64,000 nt of DNA, from IMG/VR virus record IMGVR_UViG_3300046694_000136, positions 1-64,000 of that record. One strand, written 5' to 3'. This document shows positions 5,476 to 63,800 of this stretch, in pieces (within the stretch, counting starts at the first letter, position 1; every line of letters begins with the position of its first letter). The notes under the pieces were generated by a model. That model was given only the letters and a program-made list of their open reading frames with translations, had not been told where the DNA came from and searched no databases. Position numbers and translations under genes: made by a program.

Positions 5476-6129
5476 ATGCAACAGTACTTTGAACTCAGCA
5501 ACGCCCTCATCAAAAGCGGTGGGGTAATCTGGGACGACCATAACGGTGGTTCCGAAGGTAAGTTGTTCGGTTTGGCTGCATTGTTCACCGGCAAAGAAGT
5601 TATTCCGGTGGGTCTGCACAAAGCTGATTACTTCAGCCTGAACCGTGTTTACCTGAAAGACGGTAAGGTTCACCTGAGCGACGAGTCGGTCGCTGGTACG
5701 CTGTTCCCGGTTAACTTCGACGGGGATGTGTGGGACTGCATCAACGACTACAACGAGAAGCAAGCTGGTAACAAGTTCTCGTGCGGTACGCTGGAAAACC
5801 CGATGGGTCTGGAACCAATCCCGGTTACCGTTATCACGATGACCATTGACGACTTCTGCGCCAAGATGGGATTGCCCGCTCCTGTTCATCCGGTACCCGA
5901 CCTCGTTATCGAGTACCCTACCCCGGAGATGAAGGCTCGTGCGGAGGAACTACGTGCCGGCATGAACCTCGGTAACTCCGCCTTAGTCATTCCCGTTGCG
6001 GGCGGCTTCAAAGGCGGTACCGACGGCGGTCAGAATCACCAGTTTGAAGGCGGGCGAGTCAAATCGCTCAACGTCGACTTCCACCCAACCGATGGCATTG
6101 GGGATTTTCCCGACAAGCCTAACTCTTAA
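5476..6129 (+). CDS. hypothetical early protein (217 aa)
   Basis: GGAG SD; strong codon bias; directly after the promoter motif. Confidence 0.85.
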   Translation: MQQYFELSNALIKSGGVIWDDHNGGSEGKLFGLAALFTGKEVIPVGLHKADYFSLNRVYLKDGKVHLSDESVAGTLFPVNFDGDVWDCINDYNEKQAGNKFSCGTLENPMGLEPIPVTVITMTIDDFCAKMGLPAPVHPVPDLVIEYPTPEMKARAEELRAGMNLGNSALVIPVAGGFKGGTDGGQNHQFEGGRVKSLNVDFHPTDGIGDFPDKPNS

Positions 6130-6157
6130 TCACTTAACCTTATAGAGGTGTAATGTC

Positions 6158-42914: not shown

Positions 42915-43640
42915 ATGGACGTTGGCTCTCTGGTCAGGGACCGAGCCAAGATCAAGAAAGCTTATACGGTTCAAGATGACTTCTCAGTTATTGCGAACCG
43001 TACGCTCGAAGTACACATTCCTCGACGGTTTGTGGAGAACGGGTTTACTACTCTCGATAACCATGTGTCGTCTACAGTGGTAATGGGCATTGTGATACCG
43101 GGGGAGTGCTACACTCCTCTGATTGCTTTGGCTGACTTGATTCTGGCTCCGTCTGGTATTCGTGATGTAATGATTAATGGAGTGCCGTACGTTATTCTGG
43201 AGTTTGAAGAAGGGGACACGTTGTTCGAAACCCTTCACTACATTCAAGACCCCAACAAGAACTACGGTTACTTCATGGAGTTTAACTTCTACGCTAAACT
43301 CCCTTGGTACATGAGCGATGATGATTTCACGTCCTTGTATGACCATGCAGCCCAGCAGTGTGGTGCTGAAATGGGGGGTACTCCTGAGCATATGCGCGTT
43401 TATGCGTCGTTGCAGATGCGAGACCCTGACAACTTGGACAACCAGTACCGTAACAGTAAAGCAATGTTGGAAGGACGCCCTGCGGTTATTGTAGGGCTTA
43501 ATAACGGTGCCATGTTGATTGATGGTACTATTCCGAAGTTGACGGGTGGTTATCTGCAAGACAACACCATTGCAGCGATCGTTAATCCGGATACCAAAGT
43601 CACTGACCTCGAGAAGATTCTCAAAGGAGTTCCGGGATGA
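42915..43640 (+). CDS. virion RNA polymerase beta' C-terminal subunit (phiKZ gp176-like)
   Basis: HMRVYASLQMR...IVGLNNGAM...DLEKILKG resembles RpoC HIEVIVRQMLR...LLGITKASL...LKENVIVG; directly precedes the protease. Confidence 0.7.
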   Translation: MDVGSLVRDRAKIKKAYTVQDDFSVIANRTLEVHIPRRFVENGFTTLDNHVSSTVVMGIVIPGECYTPLIALADLILAPSGIRDVMINGVPYVILEFEEGDTLFETLHYIQDPNKNYGYFMEFNFYAKLPWYMSDDDFTSLYDHAAQQCGAEMGGTPEHMRVYASLQMRDPDNLDNQYRNSKAMLEGRPAVIVGLNNGAMLIDGTIPKLTGGYLQDNTIAAIVNPDTKVTDLEKILKGVPG

Positions 43641-44494
43641 GTCAAATTATTACACTGGGGAACACTATCCTCGGTCCGGGTAAACGGGGGATGCTCAAGC
43701 CTCTCTCCGATGGCTCGGGTTACTATCGCATGCCAGGTGGTGGGTTCAACATTCCTAACCGTCACGGGGTCACGTATCCCATGAACGATTACCTGAAGGA
43801 GTGCATGGGGCAGGATAGCGATTTCGAACGCCGTATTAAAGACGGTCAGATGTTCTCGGAATTGGATCACCCTAAGCCTTACTACAACTTGGTTATTGGC
43901 GGGCAGATTGTCCGTAAAGAGATCACCGAGCTGTGGGAGTGGGTGAACCGTCTGAAGATGATCGACATGGACAACATTGCCGGTCACATCCGCAAGATCA
44001 TCTGGGATACCACCAAAGGTATGTCGGGTGCTGTACTGTGGGACGTCGAGATCTGCCCATTCGGCGATAAGAAGTGGTTCCTGGAAGAAAGCCTGCCAAA
44101 CCCTGACATCAACACCGCTCTGAGTGTTCGTACAGTAACCACGCCAATGAAAACGGGTGATACTACTCGTAACGTGGAATACTGGAGCACTGTGGACGTT
44201 GTTCCTGAGCAAGGCGTGCTGCGTGCCTGCAAACACCTCAGTGCCGGCATGGAAAGCTTCCTCACCTCGTTCCGCCCAAGCGATATCGCTCAGGACGTCT
44301 ACGAGACCACTGTGGACGAGCTGATCTACATCTGCGACAAGAAGATCAACAACCCGGCAGTTAAAGAGCAGTACGCCGGTAACGAGAGCTTCAACCAAGT
44401 CGTCAAAATGGTTGAGCACTTCAAGAACACCGTTGGTCGCGGTCGTGCTCCTGCTGTACTGGTTAACGCCAACAGCCTGGGTGCTTTCCGTTAA
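43637..44494 (+). CDS. prohead (head maturation) protease (phiKZ gp175 / T4 gp21-like)
   Basis: SELDHP, AGHI and ALSVRT motifs; C-terminal AGME and AGNE possible autocleavage sites. Confidence 0.8.
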   Translation: MSQIITLGNTILGPGKRGMLKPLSDGSGYYRMPGGGFNIPNRHGVTYPMNDYLKECMGQDSDFERRIKDGQMFSELDHPKPYYNLVIGGQIVRKEITELWEWVNRLKMIDMDNIAGHIRKIIWDTTKGMSGAVLWDVEICPFGDKKWFLEESLPNPDINTALSVRTVTTPMKTGDTTRNVEYWSTVDVVPEQGVLRACKHLSAGMESFLTSFRPSDIAQDVYETTVDELIYICDKKINNPAVKEQYAGNESFNQVVKMVEHFKNTVGRGRAPAVLVNANSLGAFR

Positions 44495-44509: not shown

Positions 44510-44551
44510 CCTAGAGTCGGTCACCCGACTCTAGGGGTTGAGTGTTCTTTT
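44510..44551 (+). terminator. Rho-independent terminator
   Basis: 11-bp stem CCTAGAGTCGG/CCGACTCTAGG with a downstream T-rich run. Confidence 0.75.
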
Positions 44552-44599: not shown

Positions 44600-45277
44600 A
44601 TGTCTCCAGCTATCAGCAAGCGTCTCAACTTCATCTCTGGTGTTATGCGTCTTCGTGGTGCTTTCCACGCCGTTAACACTGTAGCGGCGTTGCATGAAGC
44701 CTCGAAGCAGGAATGGTTGCGCTGCATCAATCCCGATGACGACACCAACTACATCACTGAATTCCAACTGGATGGTCGTAAGACTGACGCGGTCATCAAT
44801 TACACCACCAAGCTGGCTGCGATCTACATGAACGCTACCGGCGCTCTCCCGGGCACTCTGTCGAAAGAAACGCTGGCCTCCGACAACGTTATCACCATGG
44901 CCATCATTCGTCGTCTGACTGGTATCCAGATCAAGAACAACGAAGAAATGTTCACGCACGTCGCTACCCGTCTGCTGGGCATCGACAGTGCGCTGGTGAA
45001 AGCCGGTATGACCACTGACGAAGTGCGTTACTCGTTGCTGGTTACTTATCTGGTGGACGCACTGGGTGAAGAGTTCACCGAAGACAGTCTGGCAACCCTG
45101 AGCGGTTACATCGTGAAGTTCGGTGTCAACGGTCAGCTCACCGACAAGTTCTTCACCCGCCTCCTCGAAGAAGGCGAGCAGTTCTACGCCGATCAGCCGG
45201 ACAGCATCAGCGACGCTATCGACGTTATCGATCTGCTGGTTGACCGTATTGCCGGTGACAGCAAGTTCGTAGGCTAA
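44600..45277 (+). CDS. hypothetical protein (225 aa)
   Basis: AAAGGA SD; strong codon bias. Confidence 0.85.
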   Translation: MSPAISKRLNFISGVMRLRGAFHAVNTVAALHEASKQEWLRCINPDDDTNYITEFQLDGRKTDAVINYTTKLAAIYMNATGALPGTLSKETLASDNVITMAIIRRLTGIQIKNNEEMFTHVATRLLGIDSALVKAGMTTDEVRYSLLVTYLVDALGEEFTEDSLATLSGYIVKFGVNGQLTDKFFTRLLEEGEQFYADQPDSISDAIDVIDLLVDRIAGDSKFVG

Positions 45278-45290
45278 ATATTTTCAAGCC

Positions 45291-45298
45291 TACATTAC
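45291..45298 (+). promoter_or_regulatory. TACATTAC, one-mismatch early promoter motif
   Basis: Preceded by CC like the other copies; immediately upstream of a structured leader. Confidence 0.5.
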
Positions 45299-45299
45299 T

Positions 45300-45370
45300 A
45301 GGGTGACCAAGATCGGAGCCATCCGACAAGGGAATACACCAATCCCTTGGCTTACGCTTTAGGTCATCCT
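45300..45370 (+). ncRNA. putative structured 5' leader or small RNA (multi-branch junction)
   Basis: 9-bp closing stem 45300-08/45362-70 enclosing abutting 5-bp and 7-bp hairpins. Confidence 0.4.
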
Positions 45371-45431
45371 TTGTTACTCGCGGAATTCTCAAAGAAGAAT
45401 AACCGTTACATTTACCTTATGGAGTTTCACA

Positions 45432-45887
45432 ATGACTACCAAGAAAAACCTGAACAAAGAATTCGGCGAATCGATGGACCTGGGTATCAAGAACCTGGTG
45501 GACAACCACAAGTTCCACAAGGCCACCAACCACGTCGAATTCGACACCAGCAAACTGGAAATGCCAGAAGGCGTCACTCTCGAATCCATTGGTGTTGTCA
45601 GCGACTACATCAATAACCTGGCCCTGCAAGCTGAATCGGCCACCAGCCAGATCGCCCGTACCCTGCACGGCGAGAACAAAGATCTGACCACTCTGGACAG
45701 TACCCTGAAACTGGGCAATGCTCTGGACATCAACTCCACCCACCATCTGCGTCAACAAGTGGGCGAAGAGTTCATCTACGGCGGTCACACCACCGCGGTC
45801 GATTTCCACCACAACCAAGTGCAGGCTGATTGGTTGAGCAGCAACCGTGCTGCCGATCAAGACCTGGCCGCTAAGCTGTTTGGTTAA
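45432..45887 (+). CDS. highly expressed hypothetical protein, possibly of a jumbo-phage DNA-binding family
   Basis: GGAG SD; very strong codon bias; the MPEGVT-x-ES motif recalls a conserved jumbo-phage family (low certainty). Confidence 0.7.
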   Translation: MTTKKNLNKEFGESMDLGIKNLVDNHKFHKATNHVEFDTSKLEMPEGVTLESIGVVSDYINNLALQAESATSQIARTLHGENKDLTTLDSTLKLGNALDINSTHHLRQQVGEEFIYGGHTTAVDFHHNQVQADWLSSNRAADQDLAAKLFG

Positions 45888-45902
45888 GTCTTTTTGAGTA
45901 AT

Positions 45903-45950
45903 GGGTAGTCAGGGGGACCTGGCTACCTCTTATTCCGCATTTTTATTTTT
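45903..45950 (+). terminator. Rho-independent terminator
   Basis: GGGTAGTCAGG-GGGA-CCTGGCTACCT stem with G-U pairs, followed by T-rich runs. Confidence 0.65.
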
Positions 45951-45962
45951 GGAGTAGTTGTT

Positions 45963-46268
45963 ATGGCTCGTGTAATCTCGTTTGAAATGGCCCTGGATAA
46001 AGAACCTGAACGGGTTCGTAACTGGGAGTACAAAGCGCTTTCTTTGAAGATCTCTAAGAAGGCTGCTGCCAAAGGTAAACGTCCTACCTTCCTCGTTGTT
46101 GAGAAAGGTGTAGGGGTTACTCAGATGACTGTCAAGCAGGATGCTGAGGGTACTCACTTTATTCTGTCTGAGAACTCCGAGTTCAGCCAAGCTGACTGCC
46201 AGCGCGCAGTAGGCCTGATCAGCACAGCAATGTTCCAGATCATGAGCGAACGTGGCGTCATCAACTAA
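45963..46268 (+). CDS. hypothetical protein (101 aa)
   Basis: GGAG SD. Confidence 0.8.
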   Translation: MARVISFEMALDKEPERVRNWEYKALSLKISKKAAAKGKRPTFLVVEKGVGVTQMTVKQDAEGTHFILSENSEFSQADCQRAVGLISTAMFQIMSERGVIN

Positions 46269-60810: not shown

Positions 60811-63800
60811 ATGTCTACTGAAACAGATGAAGACTATAATCGGTTATTAGAGTTTGCTACCAAAGTCAAGAATTACCTTGGGGTTACCAATCTCACCAAG
60901 AAGTTAGTAGACGACAAGCGCCTCCGTATCGACTCGGAAGCGCGCAGTGAAGAAGAAACCTTGATGGCGCATTTCAAGGAAGACAGTTTGTGGGGTATCA
61001 AAACCGCACGCTTCCTGAAAGACTTCCATCTGTACAAAGCTGCGCCGGACATGGACACGAAGAACGAGTCCTTTCTGCGTACAGCAGAGATCTTCCGGTT
61101 ACAGGGGATCAAGAACTATTACTTTATCCTTCAGCTGAATAACCCGATGTTGAAAGGGGTGGATCCTCACGCTCCTGATTTGACAGATCTTCAGAAGACC
61201 ATGATCGCTAAGGAGTCCAAAGAGAACTTCTGGTATTTCCTGCGAGAAGTGTGTCGGATTAAAGGCGGTATGCCGTTCTTGGCTAACCGCGGTAACGTCA
61301 GTTTCATGTGGTCTTATCTGAACCACGTTACCACGCACATGATCATGCCTCGTCAGCAAGGCAAGCCGCAACCTGACAGCAGCGAGATCCGTGTTATCCC
61401 TGATGACCCAGCAACCGCCAAGTCTGCTGACTTCTGGAAGAAGATGGGTCACATGAAGGTCGGTGACGTGGTCATGGATCAGAAGGGTGAACCTGCCAAC
61501 GTGATTGGTGTTCACCCTCAGGGTAAGATCCGGGTCTACCGTATTACTGGTAGTGACGGTCGTTCTACTGATGCAGGGGTTGGTCACCTGTGGACCATGA
61601 AGAACTCGCTGGACAGCATCAATGATCGTGGCCTGTGGAGTGAGTACACCACGGCTGACATGATTCACTTGTTGAAGCAGAAAGCTGTTCTGCAATTCCC
61701 ACTGGTAGAACCAGAACTGGGTGTTAAGCGAGATCATGCAATCGATCCATACGTCATGGGTTTGATGGCTACGGCCAGAAACACCAACGGTGGTCTTCAG
61801 TTCAATGTCCTCAACGATGCGCAAGCTAACTACGTTGAAGCTAACCTGCCTAAGTACACCCGTCTGACTAAAGGTAAGGGTGAATGGACCTTTGCTCGTG
61901 ATGACGGTAACCCGATTACGTTCGATAAAGAAGTAGGACTTCCCGCTGCCTACTTGGAAGGGGCTCTGGAAGACCGTATAAGCCTCCTGCAAGCGTTCTG
62001 TGACAACCGGGGTATCATTGGCGATAAGAACGTCTACATCGCTGTAAACCGTGCTATCGGAGCTCAGCTGAAATATCTGGTACGTGGGTTGGGCGGTACT
62101 GCTGCTAACAAAGGCAACGGTATCGTCATTACACTGCCGGAAACCATCCCTTACTTCAAGACCCGTGAACAGGAACGTCCGGTTAATGAGGTGAATGCTC
62201 TGTTCGTTAAGTCGATCAAGTATCTGTGGGAAGAGAAGTCTACCTGCATTGAGATTGACTCTTCGGAACACTTGTACGTTACCGATGACTTCATGGTGAC
62301 CCACAACACGGTGTCGGTTCAGGTCATTAACTTCTGGCTGACCTACATCATGGGTCGAGGGTATACATCTCACCTCATTACCCTGAAGAGTGATAACCGG
62401 GCTCAGTTCGTCAACGCCATTAAGACGATCCGTAGCAGTATTCCTAAGTTCTTGGTTAACTCGACCTATAAGGACAAGGACGCTGGTACATCGTTAACGT
62501 ATAAAGCGTTTGGTGAGGATCAGGTTAATACCCTGTACATCAACGTTCCGCAACAAGGGGCTGACGCAGCAGGCGACTTGGCACGTGGTCTGACAGTAGG
62601 TTCTGGTTGGTACGACGAATCAGCGTACATCAAGTACATCGACTTGATCATCGACGGTTCTGGTCCTTCCATGCTAACCGAGATGGCTGTATGTCGTTCT
62701 AAAGGCCTGCCACACGGGATCAGTCACATCACAACACCGAACACAACGCTGCACCCAAGTGGTCAGTTCATGTTCAAACGTTTGATGGACTCTACCGAAT
62801 GGCGAGAGAAGTTCTTTGACTGCTTCAGCGAGTCCGATCTGCATGACAAGCTGATTAAAGCGTCTCCAGTCGAAACCACGTCTCCTAAACTGGCGATGGT
62901 GTATAACTACCTCCAGCTGGGTAAAGACAAGGACTGGGTGAAGTGGGTTATCGACGACCTTAACTTGAGTAAAGCTAAGGCCAAGATCGACTTGCTGTTG
63001 ATGTGGGTGGAAGACGGGGAGAACCGGTTGTTTGATGACCAGACCCGTGAAGCCATTAACAACATGAAGCGGGACGTAGTGTGGAGCAAAGAGTACAAGG
63101 ACTTTAACCTTTACATGGACTTCTTTGTTACACAGAACGAACTGGCTGAAATGTGCGCGAAGTCTTACAACGACTTCTTCTTGATCGGTTGCGATACTTC
63201 CTCCGCTATCAACAAGGACGCCTGCACCATCGTAATCCGCAGTATGAAGACTGGTAAGGTCGTTGGGGTAGGTCGATACGCTCTTACCTATCTGGACCAC
63301 GTAGCGAGCATCTTGGTGGACTTGCTGGAATGCATTCAGAACAGTATCCTGATCCCTGAACGCAACTATGCTCACCACATGATCGATACGCTCCTGATCA
63401 CGCTGCCTGCTAAGGGTATGGATCCATTCACCCGGATCTACAACACGGTCTACAACGACACGGTTGGTCACGAGAAGGAGTACGAAGAAGTTAGACGTAC
63501 TGGGTTCGCTACTCGTAGCAAGAACTTCTACCTGAAGTTCAAGCAGCACTTTGGGTTCCTCACCACAGGTACTTCTCGTAAGACACTTTACGGGTTGATC
63601 ATCGAAGCGGTAGGGAACACGGGTTATGGGTTGGCGTACAGCAAGCTTGCGGATGAACTGATTAACCTGCGGCTTAAGGCAGACCGGATTGACCACGACT
63701 CTAAGCAACACGATGACTTGGTTATTTCGTGGCTGTTGAGTTACTGGTTCATTAAGCTGGGGATGAACAAATCGCTATACGGGATTCCTCCTGGACTGGC

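What the first reader, a model, noticed from the sequence alone, without database searches (positions are those of the whole stretch)
45291..45431. Multi-branched structured RNA directly after an early-promoter motif
Seen: a 154-nt intergenic gap, unusually long for this genome, starting with TACATTAC. AGGGTGACC (45300-08) pairs with GGTCATCCT (45362-70; 9 bp, one G-U). This stem encloses two abutting hairpins, TCGGA-GCCA-TCCGA (45313-26) and CAAGGGA-9nt-TCCCTTG (45327-49), plus a weak GC-TTAC-GC loop. The 71-nt cloverleaf-like fold has no T-loop or CCA. About 50 nt of AU-rich sequence, a GGAG SD and a very highly biased gene follow. Inference: a 5' stabiliser, an autoregulatory operator for the downstream putative DNA-binding protein, or an independent small RNA or tRNA mimic.
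Basis: partly seen in the sequence, partly recalled or inferred. Interest (0 to 1): 0.6.

Follow-up and report, generated by a model that had tools for sequence, protein, structure and literature searches.

The report
Conserved folded leader RNA, jumbo-phage gene
The gap in front of the most codon-biased gene of this nucleus-forming jumbo phage encodes a three-armed folded RNA, placed right at an early-type phage promoter and kept by compensating mutations across several phage genera; it is most likely a built-in leader that protects or throttles that gene's messenger RNA.

Summary
Window 45300-45370 folds into a three-way junction: P1 45300-08/45362-70, P2 45313-26, P3 45327-49 (z -4.3 against shuffles). 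It lies directly after a promoter motif that occurs about 24 times in this 234.5-kb chimallivirus, including upstream of the chimallin and PhuZ genes. The same layout precedes the orthologous 151-aa gene in EL, RisingSun, Miami, FishSpeaker and seven uncultured phages. All three helices covary: 17 of 21 pairs carry double changes, 98% of cells are paired, and 0 of 500 shuffles reach this. G-U pairs make the fold specific to the sense strand. Rfam and ARAGORN find nothing, and the genome holds one copy.

By analogy with AR9 early promoters, transcription probably starts at G45305, inside the P1 5' strand, leaving a 4-bp P1 that pairs the first nucleotide. In most relatives P3 is followed by a U-run and looks like a terminator. 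In the window it is not.

My best reading is a cis-acting 5' leader that stabilises the mRNA end, with an embedded attenuator in relatives. It belongs to the class of 5'UTR structured RNAs reported for phiKZ and 201phi2-1, but it is a different, undescribed family. Nothing supports DNA binding by the downstream protein.

The parts
45278..45298 (+). Early-type (virion-RNAP-type) promoter: a T-rich element (ATATTTTCAAG) followed by CCTACATTAC.
   Evidence: The consensus ttcaaaCCTATATTAC-N6-G/A occurs about 24 times on the + strand of the genome, including upstream of chimallin and PhuZ. It is conserved at the orthologous locus in all relatives.
45305..45305 (+). Inferred transcription start (G), 7 nt after TACATTAC.
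   Evidence: This is an inference. AR9 early promoters read motif-(6N)-G(+1) (PMC5312081). The early motif is centred at about -10 (PMC7598289). Position 7 is a purine in all clear promoter copies of this genome. It was not measured.
45300..45308 (+). P1 5' strand (AGGGTGACC). It overlaps promoter positions -5 to +4.
45313..45326 (+). P2 hairpin (5 bp, loop GCCA).
   Evidence: All 5 pairs show double changes. Own-versus-cross permutation gives p<5e-5.
45327..45349 (+). P3 hairpin (7 bp, loop AUACACCAA with a conserved ACAC motif). It is followed by a U-run in most relatives but not here.
   Evidence: The terminator scan does not flag it in the window. The equivalent hairpin is annotated as a terminator in the Klebsiella phage Miami record.
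45350..45361 (+). J3/1 linker, including the weak GC-TTAC-GC hairpin. Not conserved.
   Evidence: It is deleted in L004 and replaced in the wastewater relatives.
45362..45370 (+). P1 3' strand (GGTCATCCT).
   Evidence: L003 has GGTCACCCT, a G-U to G-C change. The strand is kept in relatives whose spacer is replaced. Covariation.
45371..45420 (+). AU-rich spacer with a lineage-specific hairpin (45381-45405). Not conserved beyond the closest relatives.
45421..45424 (+). Shine-Dalgarno GGAG.
45432..45887 (+). The 151-aa gene (EL gp194 family, phrog_13587). It is the most codon-biased ORF of the genome and its function is unknown.
44600..45277 (+). Upstream 225-aa gene (EL gp193 family). No terminator lies between it and the element, so read-through RNA would carry the full P1.

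Best explanation
The element is a conserved cis-acting 5' leader of the mRNA for the 151-aa gene. That gene belongs to the EL gp194 family and is probably a very abundantly made early protein.

A virion-RNAP-type early promoter (45278-45298) most likely starts transcription at G45305. The first transcribed nucleotides, GACC, pair with GGUC (45362-65) and close a three-way junction that encloses hairpins P2 and P3. The 5' end of the mRNA is thus buried in a compact, stable fold. This is the arrangement known to shield bacterial mRNAs from 5'-end-dependent decay by RppH and RNase E, which fits the need for high expression.

Read-through RNA from the upstream gene forms the same junction with the full 9-bp P1. 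There it would act as an intercistronic stability or insulation element.

In most related phages P3 is followed by a U-run. There it probably also acts as a promoter-proximal attenuator that releases a short RNA of roughly 50 nt. In the window's lineage the U-run has decayed, so the structural role is what is retained.

Shown: the fold, its covariation, its strand specificity, its fixed position at the promoter, and its uniqueness in the genome. Inferred: the transcription start, the stabilising effect, and termination at P3.
For: - Fold and z-scores: -30.1 kcal/mol, z -4.26. From the inferred +1 the same junction forms, z -3.10.
- Same architecture at the orthologous locus in EL, HHBS8_1, RisingSun, FishSpeaker, Miami and IMG/VR loci L004, L019, L022, L023, L025, L026, L027.
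- Alignment-free own-versus-cross duplex permutation tests over 11 lineages: P1 p about 5e-5, post-start part of P1 alone 5.5e-4, P2 and P3 each <5e-5.
- The covariance model recovers non-seed members L027 (E 1.8e-7) and L019 (E 0.012), and places weak hits exactly on the element in RisingSun, FishSpeaker and Aphrodite1.
- On the 10-sequence alignment, 98.1% of cells are paired and 17 of 21 pairs have changes on both sides. 0 of 500 shuffles reach this. Slid controls give 39-51% paired. RNAalifold predicts the same structure on that alignment.
- G-U pairs on the + strand, and much weaker minus-strand model scores (20.7 against 104.6 bits), point to sense RNA rather than DNA.
- The promoter class also precedes chimallin and PhuZ.
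- The other 22 leaders behind this promoter motif are unstructured (z between about -1 and +1) and mostly shorter, against 127 nt here.
- The chimallin leader and the L023 copy of the element have closing stems that begin exactly at the predicted +1.
- The gene has the lowest ENC in the genome.
- In wastewater relatives, 45288-45349 is 62/62 identical while the flanking coding sequence is about 87% identical. GGTCATCC is retained although the spacer is replaced.
- The genome holds a single copy.
Against: - No transcript data exist for this phage or for EL. The start site is inferred from AR9 and phiKZ geometry only.
- If the start is G45305, only 4 of the 9 P1 pairs lie in the primary transcript. 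Yet the nucleotides upstream of it (45300-04) are also paired and covary: FishSpeaker TTACCT/AGGTAA gives 6 bp own against at most 1 cross, and L025 gives 4 against at most 2. A pure '5'-end cap of the primary transcript' model does not explain this. It needs read-through or processed RNA, or a start further upstream.
- A free-duplex test of the upstream 6 nt alone is not significant (p 0.27).
- In EL and RisingSun an alternative fold, a long P1 that absorbs P2, is about 8 kcal/mol more stable than the junction.
- Vibrio and Photobacterium relatives keep the promoter, P2 and the P3 terminator but have no clear P1. PS1, OBP, N1M2, Yubaba and others lack the element altogether.
- The conserved ACAC in the P3 loop, and 100% sequence identity among strains, suggest a sequence-specific partner that the stabiliser model does not require.
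Confidence: 0.5

Rival explanations
1. Promoter-proximal attenuator with a 5'UTR-derived small RNA. Transcription from the early promoter mostly stops after P3. This releases a short, abundant RNA made of a 5' single strand, P2 and the P3 terminator. The short RNA either simply throttles expression of the downstream gene or acts in trans, as proposed for the short 5'UTR RNAs of phiKZ and 201phi2-1.
For: - The order promoter, hairpins, U-run, gene is that of an attenuator.
- P3 is followed by UUUUGUUU-like runs in RisingSun, FishSpeaker, Miami, L019, L025 and the Vibrio and Photobacterium phages.
- The Miami record annotates P3 as a terminator.
- phiKZ has 17, and 201phi2-1 has 8, such 5'UTR-derived RNAs. 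Two of the phiKZ RNAs were confirmed by northern blot, and for the one upstream of PHIKZ221 more than 90% of transcripts terminate prematurely (PMC10914365; PMC11512511).
- The Vibrio clade keeps P2 and the P3 terminator without P1.
Against: - In the window and its closest relatives (L003, L004 and the wastewater variants) the tail after P3 is not U-rich: GCUUACGC, CUUAGG, AUUAGG. The terminator scan does not flag it.
- The P1 3' strand lies beyond the would-be stop point, yet it is conserved and covaries. Selection therefore acts on the read-through RNA.
- No transcript data exist.
Confidence: 0.2
2. Protein-binding operator. The junction, especially the P3 loop with its conserved ACAC(C), is recognised by a phage protein. 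This could be the 151-aa product itself, acting as a feedback regulator, or another phage RNA-binding factor. Binding would control read-through, translation, stability or localisation of this mRNA.
For: - The 62-nt 5' part is 100% identical between strains whose coding sequence differs by about 13%.
- The P3 apical ACAC(C) motif recurs in distant lineages: win, EL, L023, FishSpeaker, L025, L019.
- The element is tied to one gene family across genera.
- The genome holds a single copy.
Against: - Nothing indicates nucleic-acid binding by the 151-aa protein: no Pfam match, no PDB fold match, and only uncharacterised viral structural relatives.
- The Shine-Dalgarno sequence and start codon are 50 nt or more from the fold in the window and are not sequestered.
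- Junction nucleotides are not conserved in length or sequence: J1/2 is AAGA, ACA, A, or absent.
Confidence: 0.15
3. Intercistronic processing or 3'-stability element of the longer gp193-gp194 transcript. The full 9-bp P1 forms only in read-through RNA. It would mark an RNase III or RNase E processing site, or block exonucleases, so that the two cistrons acquire different stabilities. On this view the overlap with the promoter is secondary.
For: - P1 pairing extends into nucleotides upstream of the inferred start and covaries there (FishSpeaker, L025).
- In L004 it reaches into the promoter motif itself.
- No terminator lies between the upstream gene and the element in the window, L004, FishSpeaker, L025 and Miami.
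- L019, which has a strong hairpin upstream of the promoter, shows little pairing upstream of the start.
Against: - P1 is only 9-14 bp, shorter than a classical RNase III substrate.
- The strictly fixed 1-2 nt spacing to the promoter motif in every lineage is most simply explained by a link to initiation.
- In L023, P1 begins exactly at the predicted +1 with no upstream pairing.
Confidence: 0.1
4. tRNA-like molecule, known riboswitch, or chance fold.
For: Only a loose resemblance: about 71 nt and multi-branched.
Against: - ARAGORN finds no tRNA or tmRNA in the window.
- No Rfam family matches this region even at E<=10.
- There are three arms rather than four, with no T-loop or CCA.
- Chance is excluded by the z-scores and covariation.
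Confidence: 0.02

Closest known systems
5'UTR-derived short RNAs made by promoter-proximal termination in phiKZ and 201phi2-1 (Putzeys et al. 2024, PMC10914365; 201phi2-1 ONT-cappable-seq study, PMC11512511)
   Same: - Found in a jumbo nucleus-forming phage.
- A structured RNA directly follows a phage promoter in a 5'UTR.
- A hairpin with a U-run (in most relatives of the window) lies ahead of the gene.
- Size class is about 50-140 nt.
- The element is conserved at the same gene in related phages.
   Different: - The gene and the sequence differ. The reported conserved sRNA005 lies upstream of the 664-aa phiKZ gp182 family.
- The covariance model of the present element finds nothing in phiKZ or 201phi2-1, and no sequence homologue of the 151-aa gene was detected in those genomes with a profile of the family.
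- The three phiKZ examples I inspected start at late TATG promoters, not early ones.
- Here a closing helix P1 spans the would-be terminator, and the window's own copy lacks a U-run.
5'-terminal stabiliser stem-loops of bacterial and phage mRNAs (ompA 5'UTR type; established knowledge, recalled rather than tested here)
   Same: - Base pairing begins at, or within a nucleotide or two of, the 5' end under the inferred start.
- The leader is long and sits in front of a very highly expressed gene.
- The Shine-Dalgarno sequence is left free.
   Different: - The fold is a three-way junction rather than a single hairpin.
- Pairing also extends upstream of the inferred start.
- No half-life data exist.
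Virion-RNAP early promoters of phiKZ-like and AR9-like jumbo phages
   Same: - An AT-rich TATATTAC-type motif centred near -10, with a T-rich element upstream and a purine 7 nt downstream.
- It is present upstream of chimallin and PhuZ in this genome.
   Different: - Here the conserved initiation region (tagGGTGA) doubles as one strand of an RNA helix.
- The start site was not measured for this clade.
Riboswitch or attenuator leaders (multi-helix junction closed by P1)
   Same: - A P1-closed junction in a 5' leader.
- A terminator-like hairpin in relatives.
- EL and RisingSun show two mutually exclusive folds.
   Different: - The terminator lies inside the junction, not after it, so P1 cannot decide termination.
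- Junction nucleotides are not conserved.
- There is no Rfam match.

Membership tests
tRNA / tRNA-like / tmRNA | Cloverleaf recognised by ARAGORN, or a T-loop and acceptor end. | tested here: not met
   ARAGORN finds 0 genes in the window. The fold has three helices and no T-loop or CCA.
Any Rfam 15 family | Covariance-model match at or near the gathering score. | tested here: not met
   cmscan at E<=10 over 44800-46000 gives no hit on 45291-45431.
Intrinsic (factor-independent) terminator, for P3 | G+C-rich stem-loop followed at once by a U-run. | tested here: not met
   Window: the loop is 9 nt, the tail is GCUUACGC, and the scan does not flag it. The feature is met in relatives: RisingSun, FishSpeaker, Miami, L019, L025 and the Vibrio phages.
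Jumbo-phage 5'UTR-derived ncRNA (premature termination class) | A phage promoter or TSS immediately upstream. | tested here: met
   Met by sequence only. The early-type motif lies 1 nt upstream of P1, and the same motif precedes chimallin and PhuZ.
Jumbo-phage 5'UTR-derived ncRNA (premature termination class) | A transcript 3' end inside the 5'UTR that gives an abundant short RNA. | not testable with these tools
   No RNA run holds the phage. The runs that were laid are contigs, probably DNA.
201phi2-1 sRNA005 / phiKZ gp182 5'UTR sRNA family | Located upstream of the gp182-family tail gene, with shared sequence and structure. | tested here: not met
   phiKZ gp182 is a 664-aa gene at a different locus. 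Model R3 has no hit in phiKZ or 201phi2-1, and only the gp194 locus in EL.
5'-terminal mRNA stabiliser | The helix begins within about 0-2 nt of the 5' end of the transcript. | tested here: inconclusive
   Under the inferred start G45305, nucleotide 1 is paired. The start itself is inferred, not measured.
5'-terminal mRNA stabiliser | Removing the helix shortens mRNA half-life. | not testable with these tools
   This needs an experiment.
phiKZ/AR9-type virion-RNAP early promoter | A conserved AT-rich motif centred near -10, a T-rich upstream element, a purine start about 7 nt downstream, and location before early genes. | tested here: met
   About 24 copies of ttcaaaCCTATATTAC-N6-R occur in the genome, before chimallin and PhuZ among others. 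The geometry matches the literature. Promoter activity was not measured.
Riboswitch | Conserved junction or pocket nucleotides, with P1 competing with an expression platform. | tested here: not met
   Junction strands vary in length and sequence. P1 encloses P3 rather than competing with it. There is no Rfam match.

The most novel reading that the evidence does not exclude
The junction could be a dedicated regulatory RNA switch for the most strongly expressed early gene of a whole clade of nucleus-forming phages (EL-, RisingSun-, Miami- and FishSpeaker-like). A phage or host factor would read the conserved P3 loop. It would set whether virion-RNAP transcripts stop after P3, releasing a small RNA, or continue and lock into the P1-closed stable form. 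Because one strand of P1 is the promoter's own initiation region, the same sequence would act both as DNA (promoter) and as RNA (helix). This would be a new coupling of initiation site and leader fold.
Probability: 0.2. Interest if true: 0.75.

Novelty: new member of a known kind. Interest (0 to 1): 0.52.

Why it matters
Little is known about post-transcriptional control in nucleus-forming jumbo phages. Structured 5'UTR RNAs have only recently been catalogued, in phiKZ and 201phi2-1, and none has a function or a covariation-supported structure.

This element offers four things:
- A small RNA fold of about 70 nt with strong comparative support across several genera.
- A fixed relation to the virion-RNAP promoter.
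- A cultivable model (EL on P. aeruginosa; also RisingSun, Miami and FishSpeaker) in which it can be mutated.
- A link to an uncharacterised protein that is probably among the most abundant early products.

It could also serve as a portable leader for high expression from phage promoters. It would be a useful addition to Rfam for annotating chimallivirus genomes.

Tried and rejected
- Rfam and ARAGORN found nothing.
- MAFFT alignments of the leaders (A2, A3, A5) misaligned P1. I did not use them for pair counts. I used alignment-free permutation tests and an iterated covariance model instead.
- Two model searches pulled in reverse-strand self-hits and were repeated with tighter thresholds.
- A profile of the 151-aa family found no homologue in phiKZ or 201phi2-1. 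BLASTP against PHIKZ221, whose 5'UTR yields the published 71-nt RNA, shows it is unrelated.
- Sequencing-run search found no RNA holder. The four wastewater 'RNA-Seq' runs I laid are contigs, probably DNA. They say nothing about transcription, starts or ends. They were useful only for showing that relatives carry an identical 5' leader. The short replaced-spacer strings they printed were not fed to other tools.
- The Ceyssens 2014 phiKZ transcription paper is not held. No supplement tables with TSS coordinates were available. The start site therefore rests on analogy.
- A literature search for TATATTAC and one for EL transcriptomics gave nothing relevant.
- ESM Atlas feature search gave no usable hit. 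PDB Foldseek gave no hit at E<=0.001.
- A degenerate-pattern scan of IMG/VR for the Pseudomonas-type subfamily returned only 5 contigs, one of them new (L049).
- Structured leaders are not a general feature behind this promoter motif. The other 22 leaders have z between about -1 and +1.
- Complex prediction was not used, because no protein-protein claim is made.

Full report
**What the window is**

The window is the first 64 kb of a 234,503-bp viral record with terminal repeats. The genome encodes a nuclear-shell protein (chimallin), the tubulin PhuZ and a phiKZ-type major capsid protein. It is therefore a nucleus-forming jumbo phage (chimallivirus).

Its nearest cultured relatives at this locus are the Pseudomonas phage EL group, with 53% protein identity for the downstream gene. 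The local gene order matches EL gp191-194:
- a virion protein;
- the S80 head-maturation protease (43637-44494);
- a 225-aa gene (44600-45277);
- the 154-nt gap;
- a 151-aa gene (45432-45887).

**Checking the observation**

RNAfold returns exactly the described fold as both MFE and centroid:
- 75 nt: -30.1 kcal/mol, z -4.26, with 0 of 200 dinucleotide shuffles as good.
- Whole gap: z -3.75.

The gap is long for this genome. The median gap is 22 nt and the 90th percentile is 129 nt. The gene behind it has the lowest effective number of codons of 221 ORFs, 32.9 against a median of 49.4. This puts it in the company of the capsid, chimallin and PhuZ genes.

**The promoter motif**

TACATTAC belongs to a longer consensus, ttcaaaCCTATATTAC-tagtGT-G/A-Ataaa. 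It occurs about 24 times on the + strand of the genome and essentially never convincingly on the other strand. It lies in front of chimallin and PhuZ among other genes. Published work describes early (virion RNA polymerase) promoters in similar terms:
- phiKZ-like phages: an AT-rich element centred near -10 with a T-rich element upstream of -19 (PMC7598289; PMC8244752).
- AR9: motif-(6N)-G, with G as the start point (PMC5312081).

In this genome the seventh base after ...TAC is a purine in all clear promoter copies. I therefore infer that transcription starts at G45305. This is an inference, not a measurement. The key phiKZ paper and all TSS tables were unavailable.

**Conservation**

A tblastn search found the 151-aa protein in 68 phage records. 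I also fetched IMG/VR relatives. The same layout precedes the orthologous gene in these phages:
- EL and HHBS8_1;
- Erwinia phage RisingSun;
- Shewanella phage FishSpeaker;
- Klebsiella phage Miami;
- uncultured phages L003, L004, L019, L022, L023, L025, L026 and L027.

The layout is: promoter motif, 1-2 nt, P1 5' strand, hairpin P2, hairpin P3, a pyrimidine/U-rich linker, P1 3' strand, an AU-rich spacer, and the Shine-Dalgarno sequence.

Other relatives differ:
- Vibrio and Photobacterium phages keep the promoter, a small P2 and a P3 terminator, but have no clear P1.
- LAh10 has a different single hairpin.
- PS1 has the promoter only.
- OBP, N1M2, Yubaba, pEt-SU, Kc263 and Survivor have short gaps without the element.

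The small third hairpin in the window is absent from L004 and from the wastewater relatives.

**Covariation**

MAFFT could not align P1, so I used two independent routes.

Route (i) was an alignment-free test. For 11 lineages I computed duplex energies of each phage's own 5' arm with its own 3' arm, and compared them with energies after permuting partners among phages:
- P1: own sum -158.6, permuted mean -109.4 +/- 9.1, p about 5e-5.
- The part of P1 downstream of the inferred start, taken alone: p 5.5e-4.
- P2: -51.9 against -22.9, p<5e-5.
- P3: -88.5 against -50.0, p<5e-5.

Route (ii) was an iterated covariance model (R1 to R3). The final model:
- recovers L027 (E 1.8e-7) and L019 (E 0.012), which were not in its seed;
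- puts its weak hits in RisingSun, FishSpeaker and Aphrodite1 exactly on the element.

On the resulting 10-sequence alignment:
- 98.1% of cells are standard pairs.
- 17 of 21 pairs have changes on both sides.
- None of 500 column shuffles reaches any of the five measures.
- Sliding the 3' partners by 1-3 columns drops pairing to 39-51%.
- RNAalifold predicts the same structure on that alignment, with 16 compensatory pairs.

The alignment is fitted to the model, so these counts lean towards the structure. Route (i) does not have that bias.

Frequent G-U pairs would be C-A on the other strand; for example, the second pair of P3 is G-U in 7 of 10 sequences. The minus-strand model score is also much lower (20.7 against 104.6 bits). 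Both points indicate a sense-strand RNA rather than a DNA feature.

**Uniqueness**

- The genome has one copy.
- EL has one copy, at the gp194 locus. phiKZ and 201phi2-1 have none.
- The other 22 leaders behind this promoter motif are unstructured (z between about -1 and +1) and mostly 20-70 nt long, against 127 nt here.
- In wastewater data sets, relatives carry 45288-45349 with 62 of 62 identical bases, while the neighbouring coding sequence is only about 87% identical. The GGTCATCC strand is kept although the intervening spacer is replaced.

These runs are contigs and probably DNA. They give no information on transcription.

**The start-site puzzle**

If RNA starts at G45305, the primary transcript keeps only GACC/GGUC of P1. 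It still folds into the same junction (-19.7 kcal/mol, z -3.10), with nucleotide 1 paired.

In three cases the closing stem begins exactly at the predicted +1:
- L023 (GAGCAA/UUGCUU);
- the chimallin leader of this genome (GAAUCG/CGAUUC);
- approximately, the leader at 207841.

This supports both the inferred start and a design in which the 5' end is base-paired.

In most lineages, however, the 3' strand is also complementary to the 3-6 nt upstream of that start. Where the promoter-proximal sequence deviates, the partner compensates:
- FishSpeaker TTACCT/AGGTAA: 6 contiguous pairs own, at most 1 with any other phage's strand.
- L025: 4 pairs own, at most 2 cross.

A looser free-duplex test of those 6 nt alone is not significant (p 0.27).

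The simplest reconciliation is that read-through RNA from the upstream gene also folds the junction, with a full-length P1. No terminator lies between that gene and the element in the window. Alternatively, the start in this clade is a few nucleotides further upstream. Only end mapping can decide.

**P3 as terminator**

In RisingSun, FishSpeaker, Miami, L019, L025 and the Vibrio phages, P3 is followed by UUUUGUUU-like runs. The Miami record annotates it as a terminator. In the window, L003, L004 and the wastewater variants the tail is not U-rich, and the scan does not flag P3.

The P1 3' strand lies beyond the putative stop point and is under selection. The read-through RNA must therefore be functional in every lineage.

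In EL and RisingSun the linker after P3 is complementary to the P2 5' arm. This gives an alternative long-P1 fold about 8 kcal/mol more stable than the junction. It may be a lineage-specific switch.

**The downstream protein**

- There is no Pfam match. PHROG 13587 has unknown function.
- A confident AlphaFold model (pLDDT 87.8; helix, beta-hairpin, long helix, five- to six-stranded sheet, helix) has no PDB match at E<=0.001.
- It matches only uncharacterised proteins of other jumbo phages, including phiKZ-like KTN4, Phabio and Psa21.

Nothing supports the label 'DNA-binding'.

**Comparison with what is known**

ONT-cappable-seq studies report 17 (phiKZ) and 8 (201phi2-1) short 5'UTR-derived RNAs generated by termination just after a promoter. 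Two in phiKZ were confirmed by northern blot. One (sRNA005) is conserved upstream of the gp182-family tail gene in phiKZ, 201phi2-1, PA3 and EL.

The present element belongs to that general kind but is a different family:
- It sits at a different gene. phiKZ gp182 is 664 aa.
- It has no model hit in phiKZ or 201phi2-1.
- It follows an early-type rather than a late TATG promoter. The phiKZ examples upstream of PHIKZ221, 297 and 302 all start at TATG.
- It has a P1 helix that spans the terminator-like hairpin.

I found no description of it in the held literature.

**Verdict**

The element is a conserved, covariation-supported, sense-strand three-way-junction RNA, locked to an early-type promoter in front of the most codon-biased gene of the genome.

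The most likely mechanism is a cis-acting leader that base-pairs and protects the mRNA 5' end (confidence about 0.5). In read-through RNA it would insulate the cistron boundary. In most relatives it has an embedded attenuator hairpin. The rivals are:
- a trans-acting terminated small RNA (0.2);
- a protein-binding operator (0.15);
- a processing or 3'-stability site of the bicistronic RNA (0.1).

A tRNA mimic and a chance fold are rejected.

Noticed in passing
Whole genome G000; in the window at 313, 5426, 21601 and 45289 (+): About 24 + strand copies of ttcaaaCCTATATTAC-N6-G/A-Ataaa form an early (virion-RNAP-type) promoter class. Copies precede chimallin (motif at 79798) and PhuZ (motif at 71425). 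In many copies the core is itself a short palindrome, CCTA-TATTAC-TAGG.
   Followed up: partly
window 45432-45887: This 151-aa gene of unknown function has the lowest effective number of codons of all 221 ORFs, 32.9 against a median of 49.4. It is more biased than the capsid, chimallin and PhuZ genes. The fold is confidently predicted, has no PDB match, and is shared with uncharacterised proteins of phiKZ-like phages.
   Followed up: partly
G000:C1:79814-79886 (L043): The chimallin leader is 72 nt. A closing stem GAAUCG/CGAUUC begins exactly at the predicted +1 and encloses a hairpin. The leader as a whole is not significant against shuffles (z about 0).
   Followed up: partly
G000:C1:148535-148606 (L045): This is a second promoter-proximal hairpin with a U-run, in front of a 114-aa gene that is strongly codon-biased (ENC 34.1). 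Its outer stem GGUGAA/UUCACC also reaches 3 nt upstream of the predicted start. Seen by eye only.
   Followed up: no
window 44511-44537, with a T-run to about 44552: A strong hairpin, CCTAGAGTCGG-TCAC-CCGACTCTAGG, with a T-rich tail follows the protease gene directly. It is a likely terminator that separates the protease from the 225-aa gene. The equivalent hairpin in L027 gave a spurious covariance-model hit.
   Followed up: partly
L001 (EL) 2389-2465; L005 (RisingSun) 1096-1172: The linker after P3 is complementary to the 5' arm of P2. An alternative fold, a long P1 without P2, is therefore about 8 kcal/mol more stable than the three-way junction. This may be a co-transcriptional switch in these two lineages only.
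   Followed up: partly
window 45288-45349 against wastewater runs X1, X2, X5, X6: Several related phages in wastewater share an identical promoter-plus-leader 5' part. It is joined to at least three different upstream sequences and to a shorter, different spacer. De Bruijn contigs break at this shared node.
   Followed up: partly
L031 2486-2597 (-), L031 about 6000-6150 (-), L042 7862-7935 (+) (phiKZ): The published short 5'UTR RNAs of phiKZ upstream of PHIKZ297, PHIKZ302 and PHIKZ221 all begin at a late-type TATG motif and end at a hairpin with a U-rich tail.
   Followed up: yes
window 61484-61518 (-): A weak partial hit of models R1 and R2 (14-16 bits, E 0.25-1.2). Probably chance.
   Followed up: no
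window 45418-45421: A TATG, the late-promoter core of phiKZ-like phages, overlaps the Shine-Dalgarno region here and in L004 but not in EL. If it were used, it would give an 11-nt leader. Probably coincidental.
   Followed up: no
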